Shown here: positions 27,401-48,400 of the stretch, in pieces
How positions within the stretch are numbered: position 1 is the stretch's first letter
Layout: each line of letters begins with the position of its first letter
Origin: Mytilus californianus
Taxonomy: Eukaryota
DNA length: 64,000 nucleotides
Assembly: GCF_021869535.1 (NCBI RefSeq)
Contig: NW_026262581.1
Location: 96,906,001 to 96,970,000 of the forward strand
Direction of reading: 5' to 3'
Position numbers and translations under genes: made by a program
Notes under the pieces: generated by a model
The model's input: only the letters and a program-made list of their open reading frames with translations
Databases searched by the model: none
Told to the model about the DNA's origin: nothing

Positions 27401-30400
27401 ACTTAGCAATATTTTCAAAGTCTATAGACCATGACTGAGGGGGCGATACCAAATATTCTCCATGGAAATGAGATATGCCAATGCTTATACAACTGCATAA
27501 CAAATAGCATTGACCTACCACTAGTGGTTCCCAATAAATTGACCTAATCACAAACTAATACATGTTAACTATGAAAAGTTTCAAAGTCAATAGACCTTGA
27601 CTGAGGGGGCAGGGCCAAATAATCTCCATGGTAATGAGATGTGCCAATGCTAATACAACTGCATACCAAATATCATTGACCTACCACTAGTGGTTCACCA
27701 TGAACTAGACTTAATCACAAACTAATACATTGTTGACGCCGCCGTCGCCGGAAACAACATACCTATGTCTCGCTTTTTGACTCCGTCAAGGCAAGACAAA
27801 AATTGTCATTAAAGGGCAATAATTCCAAGAAGACGATGGACGATTTCCTCTATATTGTCTTAATTGTAGATCTTGTCTTGCTGATCATTTTTGCTTATTT
27901 AGAGGTTTCTATCTATCTATAACAATTTTTAAGATACAAGGCAAAAACGCAAAAAAATTGGTAAAAATCATCATCAAAGGGCAATAACTCTAATAAGGAG
28001 TCGGCTGACGATTTCGACAATGTGAACTTATTTGTAAAACTTATCTTGCACATAATTTTTGCAATTTGATGTTTTTCTGTATCTATTATAGTTTTCAAGA
28101 TAATAGGCAAAATTGAAAAAAATGGTAAAATTTGTCATTAAAGGGCAATAACTCCAATTAGAAGTCATTTCACAATTTTAACTTATTTGGACAATAGGTA
28201 GAGCTCAACATTCTGAACATTTTTGCTCCAGTCAGATTTTTTCTATTCATAACAGTTTTCAAAATAATAGACAAAACTTGCATTTTAACCCTATGTTCTA
28301 TTTTTAGCCATGGTGGCCATGTTGGTTGGGAGGCTGGGTCATAGGACACGGTCACACATACAAATACTTTTGCTTGAGACATATTTCTGTACGTTTGGAA
28401 AGAATTCAAAACTTCATTATGAAAAAGACAAGATGTAGTCCTCACTTATTAACAAGATGTAGTGCTCACTTATACTGATGACTTACCTCCCATACACTGA
28501 TGATAATACAACTACCATCTATTCTACAGCTGGTCCAATCCTTTCAACTCCCTGGTTCTGATGACTTACCTCACCTACCCCTAAACTGATAAAAGACTAA
28601 CACCACCTCATCAACCTGGTTCTGATGACTGACCACCTCCTCTACCACTGGTCACATAACCTCCACTTACAGGTTCTGATGACTTACCTCTCCTACATTG
28701 ATAGTGATATGACTACCATCTGCTCCACCCCTGGTACCACCTCCTCCACTTCCAGGTTCTGATGACTTACCTCCCCTACATTGATAGTGATATGACTGCC
28801 ACATGCTCCACCACTGGTACCACCTCCTCCACTTCCAGGTTCTGATGACTTACCTCCCCTACATTGATAGTGATATGACTGCCACCTGCTCCACCACTGG
28901 TACCACCTCCTCCACTTCCAGGTTCAGATGCTGTTAATACTGATCCATACTGATTGCCAACTGTGGTTGTGTCATAACTTCTGCCTCCTAAACATTTAAT
29001 TTTCAAGATAGTTTATCATGTTGTTTTAGTTAAATTCATAAAAAACAACTTAAACTATAATTGAATTTTTACAAAAGATGCATTCAAAAATATTTCAATA
29101 GTAAAAGTTATTTGCACGCTAACTGAATCATACAATAAACTGGGTATACTTAATCATACAAAGAAATATTTACAACTGAAATCAACATTTAGAATTACAG
29201 TAAATTCAGAAATTTTTGCAAAGTTTTTTATAATAGCAAAAATGGGGACAGAATGGGTTTTACATAAATAATTACTTGCACTTCAATTTTTAAAAACATT
29301 CATATTTGTATGTCACAATAACTAATTTCGCATTTGTTTCCATTGTTCAACAAATACAATGGTAAATGGACACACAGTTTCTGAACTTACAGTAATCAGA
29401 ATAACAATATTGAACTTTATCAAAGAGTTGATGTAGAAAAATTGTTATCACAAACTTCTGAAAAAATTTCAAGAAATACCAAGTTTCCATTTTTTATGTG
29501 TTCTTCTTGTAATTATATCCATTTAAATCCCCAAATAAATAATGTTTAGCTGAAAAATACTAATTTCTTTTAAAAAAAATAGCTCCCCAAAAAGGTCCTT
29601 TCACTTTAACAATCATGTTTTGTTTACCTGCACTGCCATGTCCAGCTCCAGATGAATCATGGGAAGATCTGATACCTGCTCCATCACCCTCCTCAAATCC
29701 ATAGCCATGACCATCACCAGTAACAGTTCCACCTTTTTCTACTGTTATCATGGTAGCATTTAAGGTGACCTTCAAAGTGTCAGTTTCTACAGTACCTCCA
29801 TTCTTCACAGTTAGATTTCCTACTTGGAATGTTGGAATCAAAGGATCAATAGTCACAGTTATTTTCCCTAGATTTTTCACATCTAAAGTTCCAACAGCAA
29901 TTAACCCTGGAGCATAACTAGTCTCTGGCATTTCTGTATACCACATGACCAGAGATTTAATCTGGCTTGTGTGAGCTTGTTCAGATATTGTTAGTTCTGC
30001 ATTACGTTCTATGTAAAGATTTTCTACTCCAACCATTCTTCCACTAAGAATAAATCTTTCAGTTGTCAATATGAAGTCAGTTGGCATTACTAGTTCTCCT
30101 CCAATATCAACATGGAAACCACAAGGAGCATCAAGGTATGTATGAGTAGATTCTATATAGTTAACAATTACTTGTTGTCGCTTCTGGATACGAACAAGAC
30201 CTTTCTTGTTACCTGTAAGTTCATGGATAATCACAGTTAGATTTTTAGTTCCTTTAGGATGATAGAAGTGCACATATGAGTATCCCTCCACTTGAACCTC
30301 ATCAAATTCATAATACACACTATTGTTTTCCATTACCATGGCTGGGTTGTCTGTTGTTAAGTCACCATTATCTACTAATAATTTTGAATGCTCTGGTTGA

Positions 30401-33400
30401 ATCATAGTCTTATTAAGTCGTGGATTATATTTCAGTTCTCTATATGTAGGACCTCTCTGTGATTCATACTTGAAGATAGTTCCCGGTCCACCATCACTAG
30501 ATCCTTTGCCTCCTCGTGAAAGATAGGCCCCTCCATACAAATTAAAAGAACCAACATGTAGAGCCACTCTACCTCCACTTCCTCCTCCACCTGTGCCACT
30601 TCCATCACCTCCATGTACAGCAATTATACCATGTCCAGAAATGTTGTAGGCCTCTACAAATAAACTGCCACCACTTCCACCACCAGTGCTGCCACTGGTG
30701 GCTTCTGTTCCATTGGCACTAATGACACCATCCACATGGATGTTTCTTCCAACCTTCATGTGAAGATATCCTCCTCCAGACCCAGCACTGCTCCCTCCAG
30801 AACCTCCACTGCCAAGATCTTTTGGTGAAAACAGAGACCCATGGGGGTAAGAATCATCAGCTCCTCCTCCTACACCACCATAACTACCTCCTGCAGTACT
30901 ACTTCCTACACCTAAACCTTCCGTTGCTTCATATCCCCTACCATCTAGATTTATCTCCCCTTCTGGTTCCAAGTCCACCTCTCCAGCATCAATATAACCA
31001 TGATTCATCAACATTGTACCTTGATATTTGATTTCCAAAAAGGAAGCTGTTACTGTCATATCATTTGTAATCTTTCTAAATTCAAGAGTTCCCGACTGTT
31101 TGATGTTGATAGTCGGAAGAGAGAAGTTTCCTTCTGACGAGATGAACACATATGTGCCATTATCCAGTAGAGCCGTCTGTGAGGTAGCTGTTACACTAAC
31201 TACAGCTTCATCTTCCACATAAATATGATGGACACCTGTCATTATTCCTTCAATAGTGGTGTTCGTTCCCTGCATGTGAACTTCTGTTGGGAAAATAACC
31301 TCACTACCATAGTCAATGATATAACTAGCAGGGGCTTCTGTTACATTGCTGAGTGATTCTATATACTCAATATACACTGTTTGGTCAGATCTCATATGTA
31401 TCTGACCAGTTCTGTCACCTTTAACCACGTGAATAATAACTTCAACAGGTTTATCTGGATGATAAAATATCACTCTTGAATATCCTGTTACTTCAAATTC
31501 ATCAAATTCATAGTCAGTTGTCTCATTAACCATAATCATAGTTGGAACAGGAACTAAGTTTCCAACATTATCAATATGGACATAACGATGGTCAACTTGG
31601 AAGTAGCTGGTATTAGTTCCTTTGAGATGTTTTAAGATTCTGTATTCTAATGGTCGGAAATTATTTTCAACATAAGATGTTCCAGCTGCACCACCATGAG
31701 TCAGGACATTGCTGCTTCCACCATCACCACCCCGGTTAGTGAATTTCCCTCCAAAGCTATATCTGTATCTACAATGGACACCAATCCTTCCTCCAGCACC
31801 TCCTCCTCCTATTGTTCCAGCACCATTACCACCCTGGACATTAATCTCACCGTGTCCTGTGAAGTTTGTAGTAAACATGTTGACACTGCCACCGCTTCCA
31901 CCACCACTGTTACCAGAGACACCATCTGTACCTTGTAAAGCTAGTAAACCATTTAGTTCCAATCTCTGGCTGATGTTCCAGTGCAATATACCACCACCAC
32001 TACCACCAACTCCATTGCCATTTCCTCCTCCACTACCAAACAGGTCCGGGTCATACACTGATCCATAAGGTTCTGCTGATGATGAAGAGTTAGCCCCTCC
32101 CCCATAACCACCGTGACTGGCCCCATAGCCTTCTCCACTAATTGTAACACCAGCTCCATAACCCTCTTCAGGTTCATGACCATGTCCATTTAGGTGGAAT
32201 ATTCCTTCACTTTCAATCCAGGCATAAGAAGAGTCAATGACAGCATCATTCATATACAGATTTCCAAAATATTTGACTCTTGTTTCACTGTTCCACATAT
32301 GCATCACATCTGTTATTTTTAAAAATCCTACAGTTCCACCTTTCTTTACAATGAAATTGTCCCAAGCAAAGTTCCCTGGTTCTTTAACATTGTAGTATGT
32401 GCCATTTTCAATCAAGGCCGTATATGCTGTGGAGTGAAATTCAATGTCAGTTGCATCCTCTACATATAACTCAGCTACTCCAGTTATAAGTCCAGCAAAG
32501 GTACTATTTGCTCCATGTAAATGGGTCTCAGCAGGCATTATTATTTCTCCTCCATCATGTAATTCAAACCCACATGGTGCTTCAGTCTTGTTTAGAATAG
32601 CCTCAGTCACTTCTACTTTCACATGTTGTGCACTTTGAATAATCAAAATTCCAGTTTTGTCTCCTATAAATAAATGAATATCCACATCTACTCTTGTATT
32701 ATTATCTGGATGATAAAATTTGAGACGTGAGCTTCCAGTTATTTCTGATTCATTGAAGACATAGTTGACAGTTTTGTTTTCATTAATCAGTGTTGGAGCA
32801 GGACTGTACTTCAGTAAGTTGTCAGTGTGTACATACTTAAAGTCTACATCAAAGTATGTCATGTTATGCACAGGGTCATATTTCTTCGCTCTATATTCTA
32901 TAGGTCTTGTATTTTCTTGTACAAATGTAGTTCCTGCAGCTCCAGCTCTGGACGAGGAGTATGACCCTCCGCCATCACCACCATAATTGTGATATTCTCC
33001 ACCATAGGAGTACCTCCATTCACAGTGTACACCGATCCTTCCTCCTGCTCCACCACCACCACTACCAACACCATTACCACCAGCAACCAAGACTTCACCA
33101 TGTCCTGTCATATTTAAAGCCTCGATCAACAAACTGCCACCACTTCCACCTCCTGAATTTGCTCCATTTCCATCTTCTCCATCTAAAGACAAAATTCCAT
33201 TCATTTCTAATATGGAACCAATTTCCCAGACCAGGAATCCACCACCTGCCCCACCAATTCCTCCTCCATTGCCTCCACCACTACCAGCATACTCCATGGT
33301 TGGATAGGCAGTCCCATTACCTGGTTTGAAGACAGAATTGTATGGTATACCACCAAAATTTGGTTCTGGTCCTCCTCCCCAGCCTCCATGGCCAGCTCCC

Positions 33401-36400
33401 CAACCAATTGAACCTTCCGTCCAACCTTTTCCATAACCAGTCTCTGCAGGATTTCCAACAGCATTAAGATTAAACTCTCCTTCAGCTTCAACATGGGCAT
33501 AACTGGATTTAATCAATGCAAGATTCATCAGGAGAAGGCCTTCATATTTAACTAGAAATTCAGCACATACGATTGTCATTGGATTTTCAATCTGTTGGAA
33601 GTTTGCTTTTGAGTTCCTTCCTACCTCTAGTATGGACCATTCAAAGTTACCTTTTTGAGTTTCCTGCACCCTGGTACCATTCTCAAGTAAAGCAGTATGA
33701 CCTGTGGAGAAAAATCTCACATCTGATCCTCTTCTGATGAACAATTCTTGTATTCCTGTTATCAGGCCAGCAAACCAGTTCCTTCTGCCTACAAGATTGA
33801 CCATTTCTGGGAAAAGAACTTCTGAATCTGCATCAATCTTAAAGCTGACAGGTGCATAGGTTTCATTTGAAATGGATTCCACAACTTCCACATATAAAGT
33901 CTGTTCTATTCTGATATGTATCAATCCTGTTAAGTCTCCCTGCATTTCATGTACAATGACTTTCACTGGATCAAAAGCCCCTGGGTAATCAATGATTAAG
34001 TTGGCATGACCTCTAAGATCCATTTCATCAAATGTATAACTGTCAGTGTCTCCTTCATTTAGAGATGAGTAAAGCCATGGTTCTCCGTGGTCTACATACA
34101 GATGTTCATCAATGTCATTATTATCAATCTCAATCCTACGGTGGTTACCAACTCGTACAGTTTCATTTCTCACTTTGTCATATTTGAAATCTTCATAATC
34201 TGGTCCTCTATCTGTTTCTTCAATGTACACAGTACCAGCAGCTCCTGATGGCATTCCACCAGTTCCAATTCCACCTCTTGTGTTCAGTAGTCCAGCATAT
34301 CTTCTGAAAAAATGGATGAATATAGACATGCGACCGCCAGAACCACCACCTCCAGCACCAGAGTCTGAGCCGTTTCCTCCACTCAGGTCGATATGTCCAT
34401 AACCAGTAAAGTTCATGACATCTAGTATCAGACCACCTCCACTACCTCCACCTGCACTGGTACCCTGACCATTCTCTCCCTGTAATGTTATCTCTCCGTC
34501 TACCCACAATACTTCACCAACATACCAAATTAAGTATCCACCGCCACGACCACCTGTTCCACCACTATTTCCACTGCCACCACCGCTGCCTGGATGCAGA
34601 GGTTTGTACAATGAATCATGAGGAATGCCACCAGTATCAGGATATGTAGCTCCACCATGGCCACCATGAGCTGCTCCATAATTTGATGTGGCATTTCCAA
34701 GACCTGACTGTGCCTCATAACCCATGAAGTCTACACTAAGCATAGCCTTACTTTCAATATTGCCATTATCCGAATAGATAGTGCCATCAGTCATGTACAT
34801 TTTGCCTTCAAATTTGATGTTCAGTTCAATAACTTGGAGTGTGAGTTCATGTTCAGAAACAGTAAATCGGGCAACAGATCCTCGCTGAATAGTGAAAATT
34901 GTTAAACTAATATTTCCTTTTTTAGTCATGTGAACATATGACCCATTTTCTCTCAAGGCAGTCTGAGATGTAGAATAGAACTCAACATCTGCTCCTTCAG
35001 CTATCGTTAAATTCTGAACATTGGTGAGTAAACCTCCCATCTCAGATCTTGTTCCTAACATGATAACAGTGGATGGTAACACCACTTCTGTTCCACTTTC
35101 TATTTTGTAGCTGACTGGTGCGACAGTGAAACTTGTAGTTGATTCAACATACTCCACATGAATGACCTGTCCTGACAATATATGCATCAGTCCTGTTCTA
35201 TCACCATCAAATTTGTGGACCACGAGTTCTGATGAGGATCCATACATCTGTAGCACAGCATGATTATTGGCCTCCAGTTCGTCAAATTCAAATTCATTGT
35301 TTCCATCATCTGTTGTTATGACTGCTGGTGAGATGAGATTTCGATTGTCATTGTCAATATACAGCTTGACAAATCCATCTTTATAGACAATACCTTCAGA
35401 TGTGTTAACAAATTCTTTTGATGTCAGTCCAGTGTTGGAGTCTGTAAAGTAGGATGTACCTCCTGCACCATTGCAATCATCATCTGACCTTTTTGAGCCG
35501 CTGTAGCCGCCAAAGGTTATGTAATCACCAGTGTACTCCCTGAAATAAGAAATGTGAACCCCAATTCTGCCACCTCCTCCTCCATATCCCCAATAATATC
35601 CTGTTCCACCCTCAGCTGTCACCTGACCATGTCCAGAGAAATTAACTGCCTTGACATGGATACTGCCACCACTACCACCTCCACTGTTGCTTCCTGTGGC
35701 ATTGCCACCAAGACTCATAAGTAATCCATCTAAATGCAGTGATCTTGCCACATTCATATTAATAACTCCTCCTCCTTGTGCTCCATTGGCTCCCCCTCCT
35801 TTACTGCCTGGATGTAGTGGCTTCTTGTATGATCCATAACATTCAGCTGAAAATAAAACCATAAATTCTGGGAATTCCACAACATCATTTATATCATCCT
35901 GTGCTATTTAGAATATTGCTGTATGAAATCTACTTTGATGTGAAGCCACTGAATGATTTCATATCAGCAGATTTAAAACTTGCTTTCAGTAATTTGAAGC
36001 CTTCTTTAATATAGATTTGTTCATTATTGGTTTGCTTGCTCTTGTGTTTTTGTTATGTATTATACTAGATCATGCTTTGTTTGTATTGATTTGTATTGTA
36101 TTTTGTTTTATGTACCTTTCAGTATTCCACTGATAAATATTTTTAAAGAGGGAGGGTTGAAAACCTGCAACAAGTTACTATAATTTGCCAGCCCAAGTCA
36201 GAACCTCATCAACATTTGTATTTGTTTATATCTTAACGTTATTTGTGATTCAGGGAATAAATGTTAATCACAGATCTTTGAAAGTGTCTGTTACATTTAA
36301 TCACAACTTTTCTAAACTCCAGCTAATTTAGAGCTTGATAAATTGTATGGACACCTGACTACTTTAGAAGATTGTAAGTTGACCTCTAAATGTCTCTTGG

Positions 36401-39400
36401 GTTTTTGCGTCATTGGTTTGTAGATATATTTCCCATATATTCTTTCATTAATATTTGCAATACTTATTTGTTTAAATGCAGATTATTTCTGGATTTCATT
36501 AAAGTAATTTTCTTCTTCAGTGTGTAATGTAATAATATTAATAATTTCAAATTTCATTCATTTTTTCTACATTACTGTAACTTTATAAAATTAGTTTCTT
36601 TACATATTACTTACTATTTGAATAATTGGAAGCAACGTTTCCTCCACCAAATCCACCATGACTTCCACCAACACCGACTCCTTCATTATCAATCCAACCA
36701 TCTCCTGGTCCTTCCCAAACCACACTCCTTCCAGTTGTGTTGATCTTAGCCTCTCCCTCCATATGTAGGCTACCAACCTCAATAGTTATATTGTCAGCAT
36801 TAATGTGGGAGGCATATCTCATCATTATATCAGACACCTCCAGGTTCAAAACACCATCATGAATAACTTCTGCTTCAGCTTGTAGAGATAACTTTCCAAA
36901 AGCAATGGTGCCTAAAACAAAAAGGTTTTTCATTTACAACATAACAAATCTTTAAGTTAAACACCTTTAACATTTTCCAATACTGTGTACAGGGTAATAT
37001 TAACAGCAGTTTCATTTTTTGTGGTATGAATTCTTCCATTTAACTTTTATTAAACAAGAATTTGAACAAGGTGAACCAACACCTGAAGTGGTAATCATGC
37101 GGTTGGGTAATAGTGGGTGGATACCGAAAGGTATTCACAGTTGTCTTTCACTATATAAGTAAAATAAACGACAATAAAGACAACAACACCCATCAATTAC
37201 CGCATGGTAGGAGTTTATTCTGGTCGACATGTTTCGCCAACAAGTGTGGCGTCTTCAGGACAATATTACATATGAAATCAAACAGTGAAGTACAAATTTT
37301 GCAGTTGTGTGGTTCGCTGAAAGTAACGTAACAATAGAGGTTGTTATGACGACGTTATAGATATAAATAGAAAGTGAAAGTAAAATAAAATAAGAATCTA
37401 GTTAAGTTAAAAATTCAAATGGTAAGGGATGGCTAGTGGGGTGTTGTCCAATTTGGAAATGAACTGACATTTTATGATCTACTTTCATCATTTCTACAAT
37501 ATTATCACTAGAAACCTCCATGAGAACAACTACACAGACGTGTAAGGATAGCAGCTAACCACATCGTTAGTGACTTTATTGACTAACTTTCATTTTTAAC
37601 TTAACTAGATTCTTATTTTATTTTACTTTCACTTTCTATTTATATCTATAACGTCGTCATAACAACCTCTATTGTTACGTTACTTTCGGCGAACCACACA
37701 ACCGCAAAATTTGTACTTCACTGTTTGATTTCATATGTAATATTGTCCTGAAGACGCCACGCTTGTTGGCGAAACATGTCGACCAGAATAAACTCCTACC
37801 ATGCGGTAATTGATGGGTGTTGTTGTCTTTATTGTCGTTTATTTTATTAAACAAATAAGTTTATTTCACATATAAGTGAAATTAAAATTAATCCAATTCC
37901 GTCAAAAAAAAAAAAAAAAAATAGAGGGTGAAAATTTCACAGTTGTCAATTACCCCCTTCTAGTGTAACATATTCTCCTCCTATCCATCTACTATTGGTT
38001 GCAGTTTTTGCTATTGTTACAACTCTGCCTTCCTCCAGTGTCAAGTTCATAGCTCCTGCCAAGTGTCCATCTAGGTCAAGGGTCACATCACCTATACCAA
38101 TCAACCTGAGGTCAGAGGATGTCCACATCTCCCCTCCATTGTCGACAATAAAGTTACTTGGTGGAGATGATCTGAAAACACTGTAGGCATCAAATTCTAT
38201 ATAGAACTGTTGACCATTCTGGATGTGTATGAATCCTGACATATCTCCCAATACCAGTCCAATATTAATAACATCTATATCAATACCTCCATCAGCAATT
38301 TCTAACATGGCCTAAAAGATGATAAATCAAAGTTTATATTTCTTATCCCAAATGTTCATGAAAATGTTATTTTAAAACATGTTTAGGCTGGGAGAACATA
38401 GTTTATCTATTGGTTGAAATGGGGCTTATAAATAGCTTTCATTATTTGTTAGTATACTTACATCAGTACTTTGTGTTTTTTGTAATTTTGTTATTTGTTT
38501 TTGTGCTTAGTACCTTTCTGATAAGAAAGCCGTTTATGACTAAAAAAATAAAATGAATTGCAAAATTACTAGTAGGACATAATGATTATGTGCAAAATTA
38601 ATTTGAATAAAAGTGTTACAACTGGTAAATTCTTCCAAAAAAGGAACCATAATTTACAGGACTTGTTGCAAAAATATAAATCCCTTATATCAGTTCATAG
38701 TATAGTTTAAACCATTCTTTCATTCTTAAAAGATAATGAAGTAACCACTAGATGTCTACTTTGATTAACTGGAGTTATTATTTGACTGTTATAATAAAGT
38801 TGATCCTACTTATCATTTTATTCATTATAAATTTTTTGTTCATTTATTTACCATGTTATTCAACATGAGATGATCAAAGTTAAGATCAGCATTATTATCC
38901 AAAGTCTCATTATCTGATGCATGTCTGGGATTTCGGTGGTTGACGACAACTGGTTTAGGAACAGCCAACATTCTTCCATCCAGATACAGCTTGCTTTCAT
39001 AAACAAACTCTGCAATCTCATCCTCAACAAAGACTGTGCCTGGACCTCCACGGTCACCATAGTATGTTCCTGTTTCTCCATAGGCTAGAAGTTCTCCACC
39101 ATACTCATTGTATGTGGATGTGTGCACAGCAATACGTCCTCCAGATCCGCCTCCACTTGTTGAATGACCTTGACCTCCATTAGCAGATACCAGACCATGA
39201 CCTCTTAGTTCACCTGATAATGAATTACCATATTAAGTAAATACTTCTAAAAAAAGGAAATTTCATGTTATATTCAACATTTAACTATTCTTAAATGTAA
39301 GTATAACAAATAATTAAAACTGAAATAAATGAAAATCAACCTCTGAATTAAAGAAAATTAGGCTAATGGTTTAATATACTAATTTAATGAACCAACTTGT

Positions 39401-42400: not shown

Positions 42401-45400
42401 CCAAAACAATATGTTACAATTGACCATGTTACGTAGAATCAGTAAATGAGCACAAAATATTTGCGTATCTGACCTGTACAGATATATTTTGTGTTGAACA
42501 ACATCAATTCAAATATCATACTAACCACTATGACCTCCCCCTTGTGAACCATGTCCTGCACCAGAATACAGTTGTGTTGGGGAACCAGTTGTTGTAGAAG
42601 CCGTGCCTGTACATAGGAATCTAGCCAACGGTTCTACATAAAAGTTTGTGGCTTCTATATCAAATGTATCAGCTCTGAATTCTGCACCATATTTTATATC
42701 CTGTTAGAAGACAGCAACATTCATTATTTCCATGTACAGCAATACCAAAGTGCAAGAATCAAGTAAGATATTAATATCTTTATTAGAAGTGTTGTCCATA
42801 TAGATAATAATTGTATTAGCTCAACTTTAAAAAAAAAAAAACATAGAAGAAAATCTTGAATTTAATAGTAAAAACTGTACTGAAAAATTATGTCACATAA
42901 GGCCCTTATTGAATCCTGTCTCTTTTAGCAAAGTACAAAATAATATACATACGATAGTTCCGACAGTCAGTTTAAGTCCCATGGGAGGTGGTAAAACCAT
43001 TACAGCCTCAGCACCTTCCTCTAATGATGCAAATCTAAACCAACCAGCTACACCTTCAGTCTTTACACCATTCTCTACAAAACTTGTTCTTGCCATCTGT
43101 CCAATGCTGATCATTCTACCAGGAACAATTCTCAGATGACGTGTGCCAATAATTTCACCATTCCATCGAAAAGCTATTTCTCCTAGTCCAAGCATGTAGA
43201 CTAGTCTGGATAGGTAAGCTGTTCCTCCCTCATCCACCCATAAATTAATTGGTGTTTTTGTTAAGGACTGGACATATTCCAAATAAGCAACATGATCCCC
43301 TTTCAAATGAAAACGACTTGTTTTGTCACCATAAAATTTATCAACATCAAGTACCCTAGAAACACTGTCCCCATCTTTTAGTTGGAGAGACACATTATTA
43401 TACATGTACACATCATTGAAGAAGTAGTCAGTTTTCCCTGGCTCATCCAAAATAAAGTAGTGGTCCCATGTGCGCTTGTTGTTGTCTAGATGAAGTTGTT
43501 CATAAGTACGACTATTTCTGATATCTTTAATGTAGACCCCACCAGGACCTCCATCTGACATATAGCCTTGCTGACCAGCACCACCCAGAGGATTGTATTT
43601 TCCATTAAAGTTGATTTCTGTATCCAGGTTTAGAGAAATCCTACCACCTGAGCCACCACAGCCACCATCACCACCGCCAACACTGATTTTCCCATGTCCT
43701 TCCAGATCATTGGATTTGATATAAATACTACCACCACTTCCTCCACCAGTCATAGATTCTCCCTTGGAACCATCTGCCTTAATTTCACCATCTATATACA
43801 GTTCTGTGCCCACATTTAGTTCTATTACACCTCCACCTTTTCCACCTACTCCTTCTAGACCATCACCTCCAGCACTACCTCTAGATAATGGTGTATAGAG
43901 ACCCCCATGATAATCTCCTCCTTCTAGGATTACTGTTTTATCAGTCTGGTTGTATATCCCCCCTCCTGCACTACCATGTCCTCCACCAGTGGCTACATCT
44001 GAAGTGTTTACAACAAAGTCAATTCCTCTTCCAGTCATTTCATCAAGGGTATCAAGTGGTCTGTCTGTTGCTGATACAGTAATCTCTGATCCTGCTTCTA
44101 CATTCAATGTACTTGTATTGATGAATATACTTTCAGCAGAAATGAATGAGTTATATCGACAATCAATACGTCCAACACTGCTAAGCATTGGTACATCAGG
44201 AGCATACTTGATACCAGACAAAGCTCTGAGGTCAACAGATCCAAAAGTTGTTTTACCATCATCATCCTTTTTAAGATAAGTTTTACCTTTATCAGTGTAC
44301 GTCCCGTCTCCTAACATTGCAGTATGACCATTCTCTCCAATGTACACAACTGTCTCAAAGCCACAGATGAAATTAGAAACACCAGTAATTCGTCCAAATA
44401 TTTGTACTGATCGGTGCTCTGGGTAAGTTGAGAAGGTGACACCAGTGCCATATACATAGGTATTAGTTGGAAGAATTATCTCCCCTTCCTCATCAATAAT
44501 AATATTGATTCCTGATGTGAAAGCTTGTCGCACCCCTTCTTCATATTCAGCAACATAGCGTTGATTTGCATGAATATGTAAGAGTCCACTGCGGTCGCCA
44601 ATTAGTTGTCTGACATCTGTAAATATTGCCGTTCCTGTGTCCCTTATGTGTAAACTAGCCTGATTCATAAGTTGGAGTTCTTCGAAATAAAAGTCAGTTT
44701 GGGAATCTTCTTCAATGGTGGAATATTTCTCAATAGATCTTCCAGCATTGTCAAGTTGGAGCCTTCTAAAGGCTACACCTTTTCTTTTGTCCTCTAGATA
44801 TACTGATCCAGCAGCTCCTGTATTCGCAGGAGAATCAGCATCTCCACCAAATGCTAAATAAATCCCTTCAAAGGTCATCTGGGTTGTAGATATAATTGCA
44901 ATCCTTCCAGCGGATCCTGCACCATACTGACCAGTGCTGCTACCTCCACAGGCAGAATATGTACCGTACCCATCATATGAATATGTCTGTATCCAGATAC
45001 TACCACCACTACCTCCACCATAATCAGAATCACTACCATTGACAGAGATCTCACCATCGTTGTACACAAGGTATCCAGCTTGAAGATGGATCTTACCTCC
45101 TCCTCTACCTCCATTGTCTCGTGGACGACTGCCAGGATTGTTCGGTCTATAAATAGATCCATAGGAATCGCCTGAAGATGTAGAATTTCCTCCTCCTATT
45201 CCTGAATGGCCTGCTCCACCATACCCTACAGCCTTACCAAGGTCTGTATCTATAGATTCTGAATCAGGACGATTAGTACTTGCAGCTGACATAGCACCTT
45301 CCAATTCTATGTTCAAAGTGGTACATGAAATATCAAAATAATCTGCTGTTATCTTGGACTTGTATTTAACACTCAAGGTTCCAACTAACATTTCAGCTCC

Positions 45401-48400
45401 AGTATTTTCATCAAAGTCTAAAGTACTACCTGGATCAAGTTGTAGATATCCAAATGAGACCCTTGCAGTAGATGTAGAACCAGAAGATGCAACAATTTTA
45501 GCATTGGATCCCATTCTCATATGCCTTTCGGGCCCAAGGATCAAATTAACAACTCCTGTCATGACACCATCTAAATCTAAAGCTGTTGATGCTTTACCTA
45601 GTATAGTTGTTGTCTCAGATAAAATAAACTCACCACCATTATAAAGTTCAAGATTAACCTGTAGTTTAGAAATGAGAGAATCTGCTGAAGATCTGTCCAG
45701 GGTACCAATCTGATTTTGACGTATTCTGATCAATCCAGTTTCATCTCCAACCACGCTGTTAATGTCAAGAGTTCTCTGATTTTCGTCTTCAATCATTTGA
45801 AGCTTGGCATAAGTTTTGGCATTCAAGTAATCAAATGTAATATCATGAATAGATTCACTCAAAGTTAAGTAAAAGTTCAGCTGTTCATTCTCATTATCTA
45901 CTGTCAATGTTTCTACAAGATTTTTACCACTGCCAACACCAGTGTAAATTGACCCAGGTCCTCCTCGTCCATTTGTTGCTGGAGATTCCCCTCCCTTTGC
46001 CCGGTAGGTACCTTCACTCGAGAATTCATCATTTTCTGTATAAACTGCAATTCTACCACCACTACCACCACCTGCAGCAGAGTTAGTTGTGTCCCCTCCA
46101 TTACTTTCTATCAATCCAAAACCTCTGAACAAGGAGATAGTGTTGACATAGATACTTCCACCACTTCCTCCTCCTCCAGTGTCAGAACTACCACCATTGG
46201 CACGGAGGTTGCCATTCAGGGTAAATACATCAGCTTGAATGGAGATATAACCAGCACCTTTACCCCCATTCCCACCATTGCTTCCTGGTAGAAGTGTTTG
46301 GTAGATAGAACCATAAGGTGTAGCTGCTTGATCTATTGTTATATTTTCTCCAACTCCACCTTCACTGGCATAAGCTCCACCATTGAGACCTGTCCCATGA
46401 GCTGTTGCTGGAACTGCATCATCACTTAATCCTACTCCTCCAACATTGATCTCAGCTCCCCTCTCCATTGTCAAGGTACCAACTTTCAAATCAGCAAAAT
46501 CTGCATAAAATACAATGTTCCTTTTAATCTCAACAGTTACTGCAACCAGCTGTAATCCAACAGATGGACTGAAAGTTGATCCAGCCTTCAATGCAAGATA
46601 GTTTAGTGTGTATACTCCTGCTTCAGAAGTACTGATGTCATAACCACTATCTGTGTAACTGGCTGTCATTGAGGTGGGATTCAGGATCACCTCTCCTCCA
46701 CTTTCTACAACCAGGTTGTTGAAGGTAACCATGCCACTAAGGTCAACAGTACAGCCACTCACTGTCATATTATTCGGCACATGAAGAGTGGCATGTTCTC
46801 CCAAGTTAATATTGATCTTTGTTATAAAGTTAGTCAGGACACCATCCACTACTTCAGCTTTCAGAATCTGTTGATGTTTAACATACAGTGTGGCAGTGTT
46901 GTCACCATCAATCTTATCCAGGGTTAGTTTTGTCGTTTCTCCCTCTATATCACTGTGAGAGTATCCTGTAAAAAAACTTAATATGTACTTCTGAATCCGT
47001 TTTTTTTTCTCTTTACTGAAATATATAGACAGACAAACAAAGTCAAAACTAAATGTCAAGACCCATGAAAATAATATTTTGCTTTAACCTGGTATGTATG
47101 ACAAATAATATTTTTGATATCTTTGTTGTTATTCAGGACAAAAGAACAAGGGAGTCATCATTTTTATATCTGGGGAAATTTGGAAATCATGTTGATTCAA
47201 AAGTTTGCTGGTTTTAATAACACAAAATGGGAAGACATTTTTGAAAAGAGTCCTTGATGGACATTGAAAATACAACATCCCTTCTTTGCTAAATTGTGGG
47301 CATTATAATCTTTAAAGATTTGATACTGTAAGGAGTTATTTCAAGTATTGCATTCCTTATATCTTTTAGAATATGTTCACCAATAAGTGTCTGAATAGAC
47401 AACTTTTTAACCTAAATTGAACTGAATATTACTGGACTAATAAATAGGTCTGAATTTCTAGCTCATGTCTAAAGGAAGTTTGGGAACATTGACCATAAAT
47501 AAGAAGTTTAACTACTTTGCCAAAATGACATTTAAATTCAGCTATTTTTAAATTTTATAAAAAAGTAAAGGTTACTAAGCTTGTTTACAAGCTAAATGTT
47601 GTGCAAAAATTCCAATATTTTGTAAGATATGTACACAGAAAAGTGTAAGGTGAATAGACACAAAATTAAATGATTTAATTTTGATATAAAATATGAAAAG
47701 ACAGTTATTATAAAAATGTGCAAAATATATCCGTTTTGAATTTTCCTTGTAGTTCGGTATTTTGGCTATTTTATTTTTTTTATAGAACCCCTGAAGTGGA
47801 TACCTAGCAAGGTTGTTTCTATGAAACACATAAAATGTAGAGACTGAGTTGTGGTTATAAGAGTCTTTATATTTTTTTTTAAATGGGGTTATCATACTCA
47901 TGCTCTACCCACAAAACAAAAAAATAGATAAATTTGCAATATTCATTCTAAACTATAGCTGAACTGTTCTTGATCAAAAGGAATAAAGGATATATCATAC
48001 TCAGTCAAAAACAGTTCCGATTTGGTAAAAAATTGTTAAACACTGCTCAGTACCGTTCAGATGCAGGTTAATGCAAATTAGGTAAAAGTAATACTTAAAA
48101 TTTAGGACAGCTATGTCATATACTGGTTGATTCAGATGATGATTCTTTCATATGCAAAAAATTACAGGTTGTTAAATCAAATAATTTTGACTTTTTTAAT
48201 TTTTTGTGTCAAAAATAAGTCTCATATGAGTATGAAAGAATGTCTATTTTCTTTTCATTAAAATTTCAAAAGAAAAAAATTAATTCTTAAGTTAATTTTC
48301 TATATAATGTGAGAGCAATATTTTCATTACAAATTTGGATGCAGAAAAATATCTCAGAACAAACATCAATTTTGAATGCTTTAGATTTGTATCAATTTCA

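What the first reader, a model, noticed from the sequence alone, without database searches (positions are those of the whole stretch)
37160..37846. Young intronic inverted repeat carrying two opposed minimal hammerhead ribozymes
Seen: 255-bp arms with 3 mismatches and a 177-bp spacer. Each arm has CUGAAGA, one extra C, a 4-bp stem II, GAAAC-AU-GUC, and stem I (GUC/GAC plus UAUU/AAUA around a 3-nt bulge). Stem III is the palindrome ACAUGU, too short to close intramolecularly. Established: Penelope-like elements carry minimal type I hammerheads in their pseudo-LTRs, reported to work as dimers via such palindromes, and often form inverted insertions. Inference: one copy is transcribed in the giant pre-mRNA, where it could cleave intron 17 or be sequestered in a ~255-bp dsRNA hairpin (ADAR/RNAi substrate).
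Basis: partly seen in the sequence, partly recalled or inferred. Interest (0 to 1): 0.75.

Follow-up and report, generated by a model that had tools for sequence, protein, structure and literature searches.

The report
Penelope-type retroelement insertion with hammerhead motifs
The inverted repeat is real, but it is an ordinary young insertion of a small non-coding Penelope-like jumping element in a mussel gene intron, and its two minimal hammerhead motifs belong to the element and probably do nothing to the host gene.

Summary
Arms 37160-37414 and 37592-37846 are 255 nt with 3 mismatches and a 177-nt spacer, and each arm carries a complete minimal type I hammerhead core.

The repeat is only part of one ~790-bp insertion (about 37058-37846). 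It is flanked by a 13-bp duplication, and a contig from a related species lacks it. The element belongs to a low-copy (~70 hammerheads), ~1-kb, ORF-less family. That family shares its 3' end with autonomous RT/GIY-YIG Penelope-like elements (PLEs) in the same genome.

The layout matches published PLE insertion architecture:
- Two 5'-truncated copies lie head to head.
- A "tail" extension is present at one end only.
- The target is AT-rich.

The motif details are also published for PLE minimal hammerheads: the extra nucleotide after A9, the G10.1-C11.1 pair and the palindromic ACAUGU. Helix II covaries across PLE families here.

- The host gene is on the minus strand, so the sense ribozyme in the pre-mRNA is the left-arm copy (cut 3' of minus-strand C37226), not C37780.
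- There is no second sense copy to form a dimer.
- The intron RNA is predicted to fold into a 255-bp duplex.

The scan has already reported similar PLE-type hammerhead elements elsewhere in this genome. This is a new member of a known kind, of low interest.

The parts
37045..37057 (.). Left copy of the candidate 13-bp target-site duplication (ttttattaaacaa), AT-rich and containing ATT
   Evidence: Read. The same 13 letters recur at 37842-37854. A contig from organism C runs from 37057 directly to about 37855-37934 (record 3).
37051..37159 (-). PLE 'tail' extension: the first ~104-109 nt of the next unit, attached to the left (inverted) copy only
   Evidence: BLAST of the tandem unit from L011 matches 37412->37051 continuously. 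Family 3' ends fall into two classes, at -9..+3 and at about +99..+121.
37160..37414 (-). Left arm: inverted, 5'-truncated copy of the last ~253-255 nt of the element's 3' region (pLTR part)
37226..37258 (-). Minimal hammerhead core of the left arm. It is sense in the host pre-mRNA, with a predicted cut 3' of minus-strand C37226. Loop II carries a CpG transition (37245).
37415..37591 (+). 'Spacer': not a separate piece, but positions 1-~178 of the 433-nt 3' region, continuous with the right arm
   Evidence: Other genomic copies match query 255-687 as one block.
37592..37846 (+). Right arm: the last 255 nt of the direct, 5'-truncated 433-nt copy. It ends at the family's canonical 3' end with no extension.
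37748..37780 (+). Minimal hammerhead core of the right arm. It is antisense to the host gene, with a predicted cut 3' of C37780. Proximal helix I is 37745-47 with 37781-83.
37842..37854 (.). Right copy of the candidate target-site duplication. It overlaps the last 5 nt of the element (microhomology).
36912..37953 (-). Host intron (GT at 37953-52, AG at 36913-12 on the minus strand), 1,042 nt, of which about 790 nt is the insertion
   Evidence: The flanking ORFs 37946-38308(-) and 36607-36933(-) align to consecutive parts of the repeated module of the 2,106-aa exon. Joining at these sites keeps the reading frame. This is an inference; no RNA support was obtained.

Best explanation
This is one insertion event of a small, non-coding, non-autonomous derivative of a Penelope-like retroelement (PLE). 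The family unit is about 1,016 bp, made of 583 bp of internal sequence plus a 433-bp 3' region that carries a minimal type I hammerhead. The insertion lies in a short intron of a giant minus-strand gene of a bivalve.

A PLE reverse transcriptase/GIY-YIG endonuclease supplied in trans cut an AT-rich target. cDNA was then primed from both DNA ends. This gave two 5'-truncated copies of the element's 3' region lying head to head.
- One copy starts at the canonical 3' end (37846).
- The other starts about 105 nt further downstream on the template (37051). This extra stretch is the PLE 'tail'.
- A 13-bp target duplication flanks the whole.

The inverted repeat is simply the part that the two copies share.

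The hammerheads are element equipment. In the literature they are minimal, thought to act as dimers, weakly active or protein-assisted, and of unsettled role.

In the host pre-mRNA only the left-arm copy is sense. It has no partner to dimerise with, and it is predicted to be locked in a 255-bp duplex. It most likely neither cleaves the intron nor serves the host.

Shown: the anatomy, family membership, covariation and the empty site. Inferred: the two-ended priming mechanism, supply of the enzyme in trans, and inertness in the host.
For: The repeat and both motifs are confirmed.

Family:
- The stretch gave 110 matches in the genome.
- 70 hammerheads lie within 2 mismatches of this one, against 0 in the control.
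- The tandem unit is 1,016 bp and has no long ORF.

Autonomous relatives:
- L031 has two identical minimal hammerheads 3,927 bp apart. They flank a 749-aa ORF with RVT_1 and GIY-YIG domains.
- L052 has an RVT_1 ORF. It shares the last ~225 nt (81%) and the first ~104 nt (85%) with this family.

Hammerhead fold across 20 sequences from about 8 families:
- All 6 helix II pairs show compensatory changes, and 87.5% of cells are paired.
- Proximal helix I covaries between G-C and A-U.
- The covariation score is 0.387, against 0.163 when shuffled (0 of 500 shuffles reach it) and at most 0.083 when the partners are slid.
- Genome-wide, the motif pattern has 342 hits against 14 in the control.

Insertion architecture:
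- All 13 opposite-strand hammerhead pairs within 5 kb are in the order (-,+), with none (+,-).
- In 14 of 15 inverted insertions, one outer end has the ~100-120-nt extension and the other has none.
- Both features are described for PLEs (PMC8557442, PMC3846280).
- The Anolis PLE enzyme extends both target strands, starts at two internal sites and prefers AT-rich ATT targets (PMC11167929).

Age and reality of the insertion:
- An organism C contig skips 37058-~37854.
- Contigs from an independent study of organism A cross both outer junctions.
- The arm differences are 3 CpG transitions.

Host context: a minus-strand gene with a GT-AG intron. The intron RNA has a minimum free energy of -526.7 kcal/mol with the arms fully paired.
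Against: - No cleavage assay exists for this motif. Rfam hammerhead models give no hit.
- Within the family, the hammerhead is only slightly better conserved than the rest of the 3' region (0.98 against 0.93), and other segments are equally conserved. The distal helix I pairing (UAUU/AAUA) has no covariation support.
- The closest autonomous relative found is only 81-85% identical at the shared ends, so the actual mobilising partner is not identified.
- The inner junction of the inverted repeat (about 37412-37414) is not confirmed by any independent spanning read or contig.
- The TSD overlaps element homology by 5-7 nt on each side, so the exact boundaries are ambiguous.
- In vitro, the Anolis enzyme showed no difference in start site between top and bottom strands (PMC11167929). 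That does not by itself predict the one-ended tail seen here.
Confidence: 0.85

Rival explanations
1. The intronic hammerhead is active in the host transcript and cleaves the pre-mRNA of the giant gene, lowering its output.
For: The catalytic core of the left-arm copy is intact and is sense in the pre-mRNA. A 2026 preprint reports that retrozymes are depleted from vertebrate introns, which would fit such elements being harmful in genes (10.64898/2026.07.22.740005, abstract).
Against: Single minimal PLE hammerheads showed no detectable cleavage, and dimers showed only low cleavage (PMC4209133). The Anolis motif needed the element's protein (PMC11167929). The window holds only one sense copy. 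The motif is predicted to be buried in a 255-bp duplex. The insertion persists in independent samples.
Confidence: 0.04
2. When the gene is transcribed, the 255-bp intronic hairpin forms and is processed as double-stranded RNA by ADAR editing or Dicer. This might yield small RNAs that target the PLE family, or might affect splicing.
For: The predicted fold has the arms fully paired. Rotifer Penelope families are known small-RNA targets (PMC3846280).
Against: There is no RNA evidence. The one RNA run gave 19 reads, none at least 99% identical, all explained by other copies, and the flanking exons had no coverage. The three arm differences are CpG changes in the DNA, not editing. Introns are short-lived.
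Confidence: 0.15
3. The inverted structure arose by snap-back (self-priming) of a single cDNA or from an antisense template, not by priming from both target strands.
For: Arkhipova et al. 2013 (PMC3846280) argue for self-priming, based on palindromes at inverted junctions. Such a palindrome exists in L052 at 2146-2248. The arms here were probably identical at insertion.
Against: The window copy has no palindrome at its inner junction. The left arm carries a 109-nt extension that the right arm lacks, and snap-back copying of one arm from the other cannot produce that. The enzyme extends both strands in vitro (PMC11167929).
Confidence: 0.15
4. The inverted repeat is an assembly artefact (a collapsed or mis-joined repeat).
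For: PLE inverted or tandem structures are known to trouble assemblies (PMC8557442). No contig spans the inner junction.
Against: Both outer junctions are seen in an independent study of the same species. The same architecture recurs at about 15 loci with different truncation points. The TSD and the empty site fit a single clean insertion.
Confidence: 0.03
5. It is a foldback or MITE-type DNA transposon that happens to contain hammerhead-like motifs.
For: It has long inverted arms, an AT-rich target and no ORF.
Against: Arm lengths and inner breakpoints differ at every locus, and the copies are 5'-truncated. Most copies are single-armed or tandem. The ends are shared with RT/GIY-YIG elements.
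Confidence: 0.02

Closest known systems
Minimal hammerhead ribozymes of Penelope-like elements (min-HHR; Cervera & de la Pena 2014, PMC4209133)
   Same: It has the CUGANGA and GAAA boxes and a C17 cleavage site. It has one unpaired nucleotide between A9 and G10.1, and a G10.1-C11.1 pair. There is no closed helix III; a palindromic ACAUGU stands in its place. Helix I is short and loop 1 is poorly defined. It lies in the repeated 3'/pLTR region. Several consensus families with compensatory changes occur in one genome. Dual motifs lie on opposite strands 100-700 bp apart.
   Different: Helix II is only 4 bp (possibly 5 with a bulge) with a 7-nt loop. Most schistosome families have 7-8 bp, and the other families of this genome have 5-6 bp. 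Position 7 is A. Activity has not been tested.
Canonical EN+ Penelope-like element insertion architecture (Arkhipova et al. 2013, PMC3846280; Craig et al. 2021, PMC8557442; PMC11167929)
   Same: The copies are 5'-truncated. An inverted 5'-truncated copy lies head to head with the direct one. An optional 'tail' extension is present at one end only. The TSD is variable and short, and the target is AT-rich. Partial tandems forming pLTRs occur at other loci.
   Different: This copy and its family have no RT/EN ORF. The extension is about 100-120 nt rather than the published 30-40 bp.
Non-LTR retrozymes of animals (Cervera & de la Pena 2020, PMC7229834; Li et al. 2026 preprint 10.64898/2026.07.22.740005)
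   Same: It is a non-coding, hammerhead-bearing, non-autonomous repeat related to PLE pLTRs, and it can occur in tandem.
   Different: The unit is about 1 kb rather than about 170-400 nt. The hammerhead is the minimal PLE type, not the canonical type I with loop-loop contacts. Most copies are dispersed, truncated or inverted rather than in long tandem arrays. No circular RNA has been shown.
L1 5' inversions by twin priming
   Same: Both ends of the target break prime cDNA synthesis, giving an insertion whose 5' part is inverted.
   Different: In L1 the two segments cover different parts of the RNA, so no inverted repeat results. Here both segments cover the same 3' region. This requires two templates or a template containing the region twice.

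Membership tests
PLE minimal hammerhead (min-HHR) | Conserved catalytic boxes CUGANGA ... GAAA ... UH in type I order | tested here: met
   Present in both arms: 2 hits against 0.02 expected in the window.
PLE minimal hammerhead (min-HHR) | One unpaired nucleotide between A9 and G10.1, and a G10.1-C11.1 pair | tested here: met
   C37755, and G37756 paired with C37770. Column 30 is occupied in all 20 aligned motifs. The first helix II pair is GC in 13 and GU in 5.
PLE minimal hammerhead (min-HHR) | No closed helix III; palindromic 15.2-16.2 positions and loop that allow a dimeric helix III | tested here: met
   ACATGT at 37774-37779 is invariant in alignment A1.
PLE minimal hammerhead (min-HHR) | Helices supported by compensatory changes among families in the genome | tested here: met
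   Helix II: 6 of 6 pairs have changes on both sides. Proximal helix I covaries between GC and AU. Distal helix I is not supported.
PLE minimal hammerhead (min-HHR) | Located in the pLTR of elements encoding RT and GIY-YIG | tested here: met
   L031 has motifs at 747 and 4674 flanking an ORF with RVT_1 and GIY-YIG. The window copy itself is ORF-less but shares its ends with L052.
PLE minimal hammerhead (min-HHR) | Self-cleavage (as a dimer or with protein help) | not testable with these tools
   No assay is available. A thermodynamic co-fold did not return the canonical dimer, which is uninformative.
Rfam hammerhead families (e.g. Hammerhead_1, RF00163) | Score at or above the family's gathering threshold | tested here: not met
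   No hammerhead hit even at E<=10 on 5 kb or on 147 nt. The motifs in the autonomous PLE L031 are also missed, so the models do not cover this minimal form.
Penelope-like element (autonomous) | Single ORF with a telomerase-like RT and a GIY-YIG endonuclease | tested here: not met
   There is no ORF above about 140 aa in the 1,016-bp unit, and the internal 105-790 region is unrelated to L052. The family is therefore a non-autonomous derivative.
Penelope-like element insertion signature | 5'-truncation, head-to-head inverted copy, one-ended tail extension, TSD | tested here: met
   The empty site is in organism C. The tail is about 105 nt, against 30-40 bp published.
Animal non-LTR retrozyme | Short tandem units with canonical type I hammerheads that yield circular RNA | tested here: inconclusive
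   Tandem units occur at some loci (L011). However, the unit is about 1 kb, the ribozyme is the minimal type, and circular RNA was not tested.

The most novel reading that the evidence does not exclude
In this family, inverted insertions almost always (14 of 15) have the ~105-nt extension at exactly one outer end. This extension is about three times the published 30-40-bp PLE 'tail'. It would mean that in vivo the two strands of the target break are primed at two different, fixed template sites. In vitro work on the Anolis element saw no such strand-specific choice. If so, this young low-copy family would be a clean natural data set for the unresolved PLE integration mechanism.
Probability: 0.3. 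Interest if true: 0.4.

Novelty: new member of a known kind. Interest (0 to 1): 0.2.

Why it matters
It matters little for the host. This is a young, lineage-specific transposon insertion that roughly quadrupled the length of a short intron. It offers a presence/absence marker between related mussel species.

For mobile-element biology it adds a well-preserved bivalve example of a non-autonomous PLE parasite. It has minimal hammerheads, clear covariation across families, and a very regular insertion architecture: head-to-head copies, a one-ended long tail and a TSD. These could help in modelling PLE integration.

It also shows that Rfam models miss this abundant ribozyme class.

Tried and rejected
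- **Rfam cmscan.** I ran it on 5 kb and on 147 nt around the motif, and on two autonomous-type loci. No hammerhead hit appeared. I treat this as a limit of the models, not as evidence against the motif.
- **Weak snoRNA-like hits.** Those at 38308-38471 are far below threshold and probably due to chance.
- **Within-family conservation.** The hammerhead is only marginally better kept than its surroundings, so I dropped this as an argument.
- **RNAcofold of two copies.** It did not give the canonical dimer. This is uninformative.
- **RNA reads.** One raw RNA run, about 6% sampled, gave 19 reads. All came from other family copies and none fell on the flanking exons. There is therefore no statement on expression, editing, strand or RNA ends at this locus.
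- **Short-read contigs.** They break inside the repeat, so the inner junction could not be verified independently.
- **Pfam on the host exons.** It gave only a sub-threshold G8 hit, so the host gene was not identified and 'intron 17' was not checked.
- **Mobilising partner.** The exact autonomous partner was not found. The best relative is 81-85% identical at the shared ends.
- **Alternative readings.** The DNA-transposon (foldback) and assembly-artefact readings were considered and rejected; see the rival explanations.

Full report
**1. The observation**

The repeat finder returns one long inverted repeat with arms 37160-37414 and 37592-37846. It is 255 nt long, 99% complementary, and has 177 nt between the arms.

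On the + strand:
- CTGAAGA at 37748-54
- an extra C at 37755
- GCCA/TGGC closing a 7-nt loop
- GAAAC, with ACATGT at 37774-79
- C37780, followed by GAC, which pairs with GTC at 37745-47

The mirror motif lies at 37226-37258 on the minus strand. A core pattern for this motif occurs twice in the 64-kb window, against 0.02 expected.

The three arm mismatches are all transitions at CpG sites. In each, the left arm is the derived state relative to the family majority. This fits decay after insertion.

**2. What the repeat belongs to**

The window lies in a 1.65-Gb assembly. Earlier notes of this scan call it a mussel, and the RNA runs found carry mollusc labels.

Searching the stretch against its own genome gave 110 matches. 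Most cover query 255-687 as one block. The 'spacer' is therefore continuous with the right arm, forming a 433-nt 3' region.

Other copies continue upstream into shared sequence, and many continue downstream as well. At a tandem locus (L011) the unit is 1,016 bp: 583 bp of internal sequence plus the 433-bp 3' region. It has no long ORF.

In the window, the unit matches two places:
- 37414-37846 on the + strand
- 37412 down to 37051 on the minus strand, as one continuous block

The left copy thus runs 109 nt beyond the arm, into the start of the next unit.

The 13-mer ttttattaaacaa flanks the whole, at 37045-57 and 37842-54.

**3. Independent samples**

- A 1,255-nt contig from a related organism (C) aligns to 36290-37057 and then to 37935-38342, with only 78 letters between. 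That matches an empty site holding a single copy of the 13-mer.
- Contigs from another study of the same organism (A) cross both outer junctions.
- No contig bridges the inner junction, so that junction rests on the assembly and on the recurrence of the same architecture elsewhere.
- The only raw RNA run gave 19 reads. None was at least 99% identical, all lay on the repeat, and none lay on the flanking exons. Nothing can be said about expression at this locus.

**4. Penelope-like nature**

A genome-wide pattern search for the minimal hammerhead found 342 hits, against 14 for the reversed control. The hits fall into several sequence families.

One family flanks a full element (L031). It has two identical motifs 3,927 bp apart around a 749-aa ORF with RVT_1 and GIY-YIG domains.

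Another inverted pair (L052) has an RVT_1 ORF. It shares the last ~225 nt (81%) and the following ~104 nt (85%) with the present family, but nothing in between.

The family is small: 70 motifs within two mismatches, none in the control.

It is therefore a non-autonomous derivative that keeps only the cis-acting ends of a PLE. Such derivatives are described for other PLEs and for retrozymes (PMC8557442; preprint 10.64898/2026.07.22.740005).

**5. The ribozyme fold**

I aligned 20 motifs from about eight families and counted pairs for the hammerhead structure.
- All six helix II pairs show compensatory changes, and 87.5% of cells are paired.
- Proximal helix I switches between G-C and A-U.
- The covariation score is 0.387. 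Shuffles give 0.163 (0 of 500 reach the observed value), and slid partners give at most 0.083.
The 3' half of it is part of an AATAAA that is conserved after the cut site in nearly all families.

Cervera & de la Pena (PMC4209133) describe these same traits as emergent features of PLE minimal hammerheads:
- the G10.1-C11.1 pair
- the palindromic 15.2-16.2 positions
- dual motifs on opposite strands 100-700 bp apart

They found no cleavage by single motifs and only weak cleavage by dimers. The Anolis PLE hammerhead needed the element's protein and was dispensable for insertion in vitro (PMC11167929).

Rfam models miss the motif here and in L031. Within the family, the motif is only marginally better conserved than its surroundings.

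**6. How the inverted repeat arose**

All 13 opposite-strand motif pairs of the family within 5 kb are ordered (-,+). The 3' ends therefore face outward and the truncated 5' ends face each other.

Family 3' ends fall into two classes: at the end of the 3' region (-9 to +3), or about 99-121 nt further on. In 14 of 15 inverted insertions, one outer end belongs to each class. In the window the values are 0 at 37846 and +109 at 37051.

[quoted passage not shown] Here the tail is about three times longer than the published 30-40 bp.

The Anolis enzyme cuts AT-rich ATT sites, extends both strands, and starts reverse transcription at two internal template sites (PMC11167929).

The simplest reading is that cDNAs were primed from both ends of one staggered break and joined in the middle. 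Snap-back copying cannot explain an extension carried by only one arm.

**7. Host context**

Large minus-strand ORFs (29560-35880 and 42893-47059) and small ones on either side of the insertion belong to a gene built of repeated Gly-rich modules.

ORF 37946-38308 aligns to module positions about 1479-1578 of the large exon, and ORF 36607-36933 aligns to about 1608-1661. A GT at 37953-52 and an AG at 36913-12 on the minus strand join them in frame.

The insertion therefore fills about 790 of the 1,042 nt of this intron.

- The copy that is sense in the pre-mRNA is the left arm, with its cut 3' of minus-strand C37226, not C37780.
- No second sense motif exists in the 64 kb.
- The intron RNA is predicted to pair the arms completely, with a minimum free energy of -526.7 kcal/mol.

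Cleavage of the host transcript is therefore unlikely. Formation of double-stranded RNA is plausible but untested.

**8. Verdict**

The structure, motif details and inverted arrangement are already described for this class. Earlier follow-ups of this scan reported comparable PLE-type hammerhead repeats elsewhere in the same genome.

It is a new family member, useful as a clean example, and not a new kind of element. No evidence supports a host function.

Noticed in passing
L031:3798-4481, L052:4089-4745, L038:3736-4395: The autonomous-type PLE copies of this genome carry a second ORF of about 218-227 aa with a C2H2 zinc finger. It lies immediately after, and slightly overlaps, the RT-GIY-YIG ORF, upstream of the hammerhead-bearing 3' region. 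I did not check whether this is described for any PLE clade.
   Followed up: partly
alignment A1; window 37787-37792 (+) and 37214-37219 (-): AATAAA lies 3-12 nt after the predicted hammerhead cut site in nearly all minimal-hammerhead families of the genome. It may be a polyadenylation signal rather than, or as well as, the distal strand of helix I.
   Followed up: partly
loci L001-L056 (15 inverted insertions): In 14 of 15 head-to-head insertions, one outer end carries a ~100-120-nt extension and the other carries none. The exception is the C143:37044426-37047493 cluster, with 197 and 108.
   Followed up: yes
L052:2146-2248: A ~100-bp near-perfect palindrome sits at the inner junction of a 1,524-bp inverted PLE pair. 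It scores as several miRNA-precursor families in Rfam below their thresholds. The window copy has no such palindrome.
   Followed up: no
window 37116-37859: The few RNA reads on the repeat all have their first mate on the element's sense strand. If the library is dUTP-stranded, this would mean antisense transcripts of the family. With only 19 reads this is too little to interpret.
   Followed up: no
window 29560-35880 and 42893-47059 (minus strand): Two very long open exons (2,106 and 1,388 aa) consist of repeated ~420-aa Gly-rich modules (GGGSGG-type motifs). The only Pfam hit is a sub-threshold G8 match. The host gene was not identified.
   Followed up: no
window 37906-37922: An A run of about 19 nt lies 60 nt beyond the right end of the insertion, inside the same intron. 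The read tool skipped 37895-37934 as repetitive.
   Followed up: no
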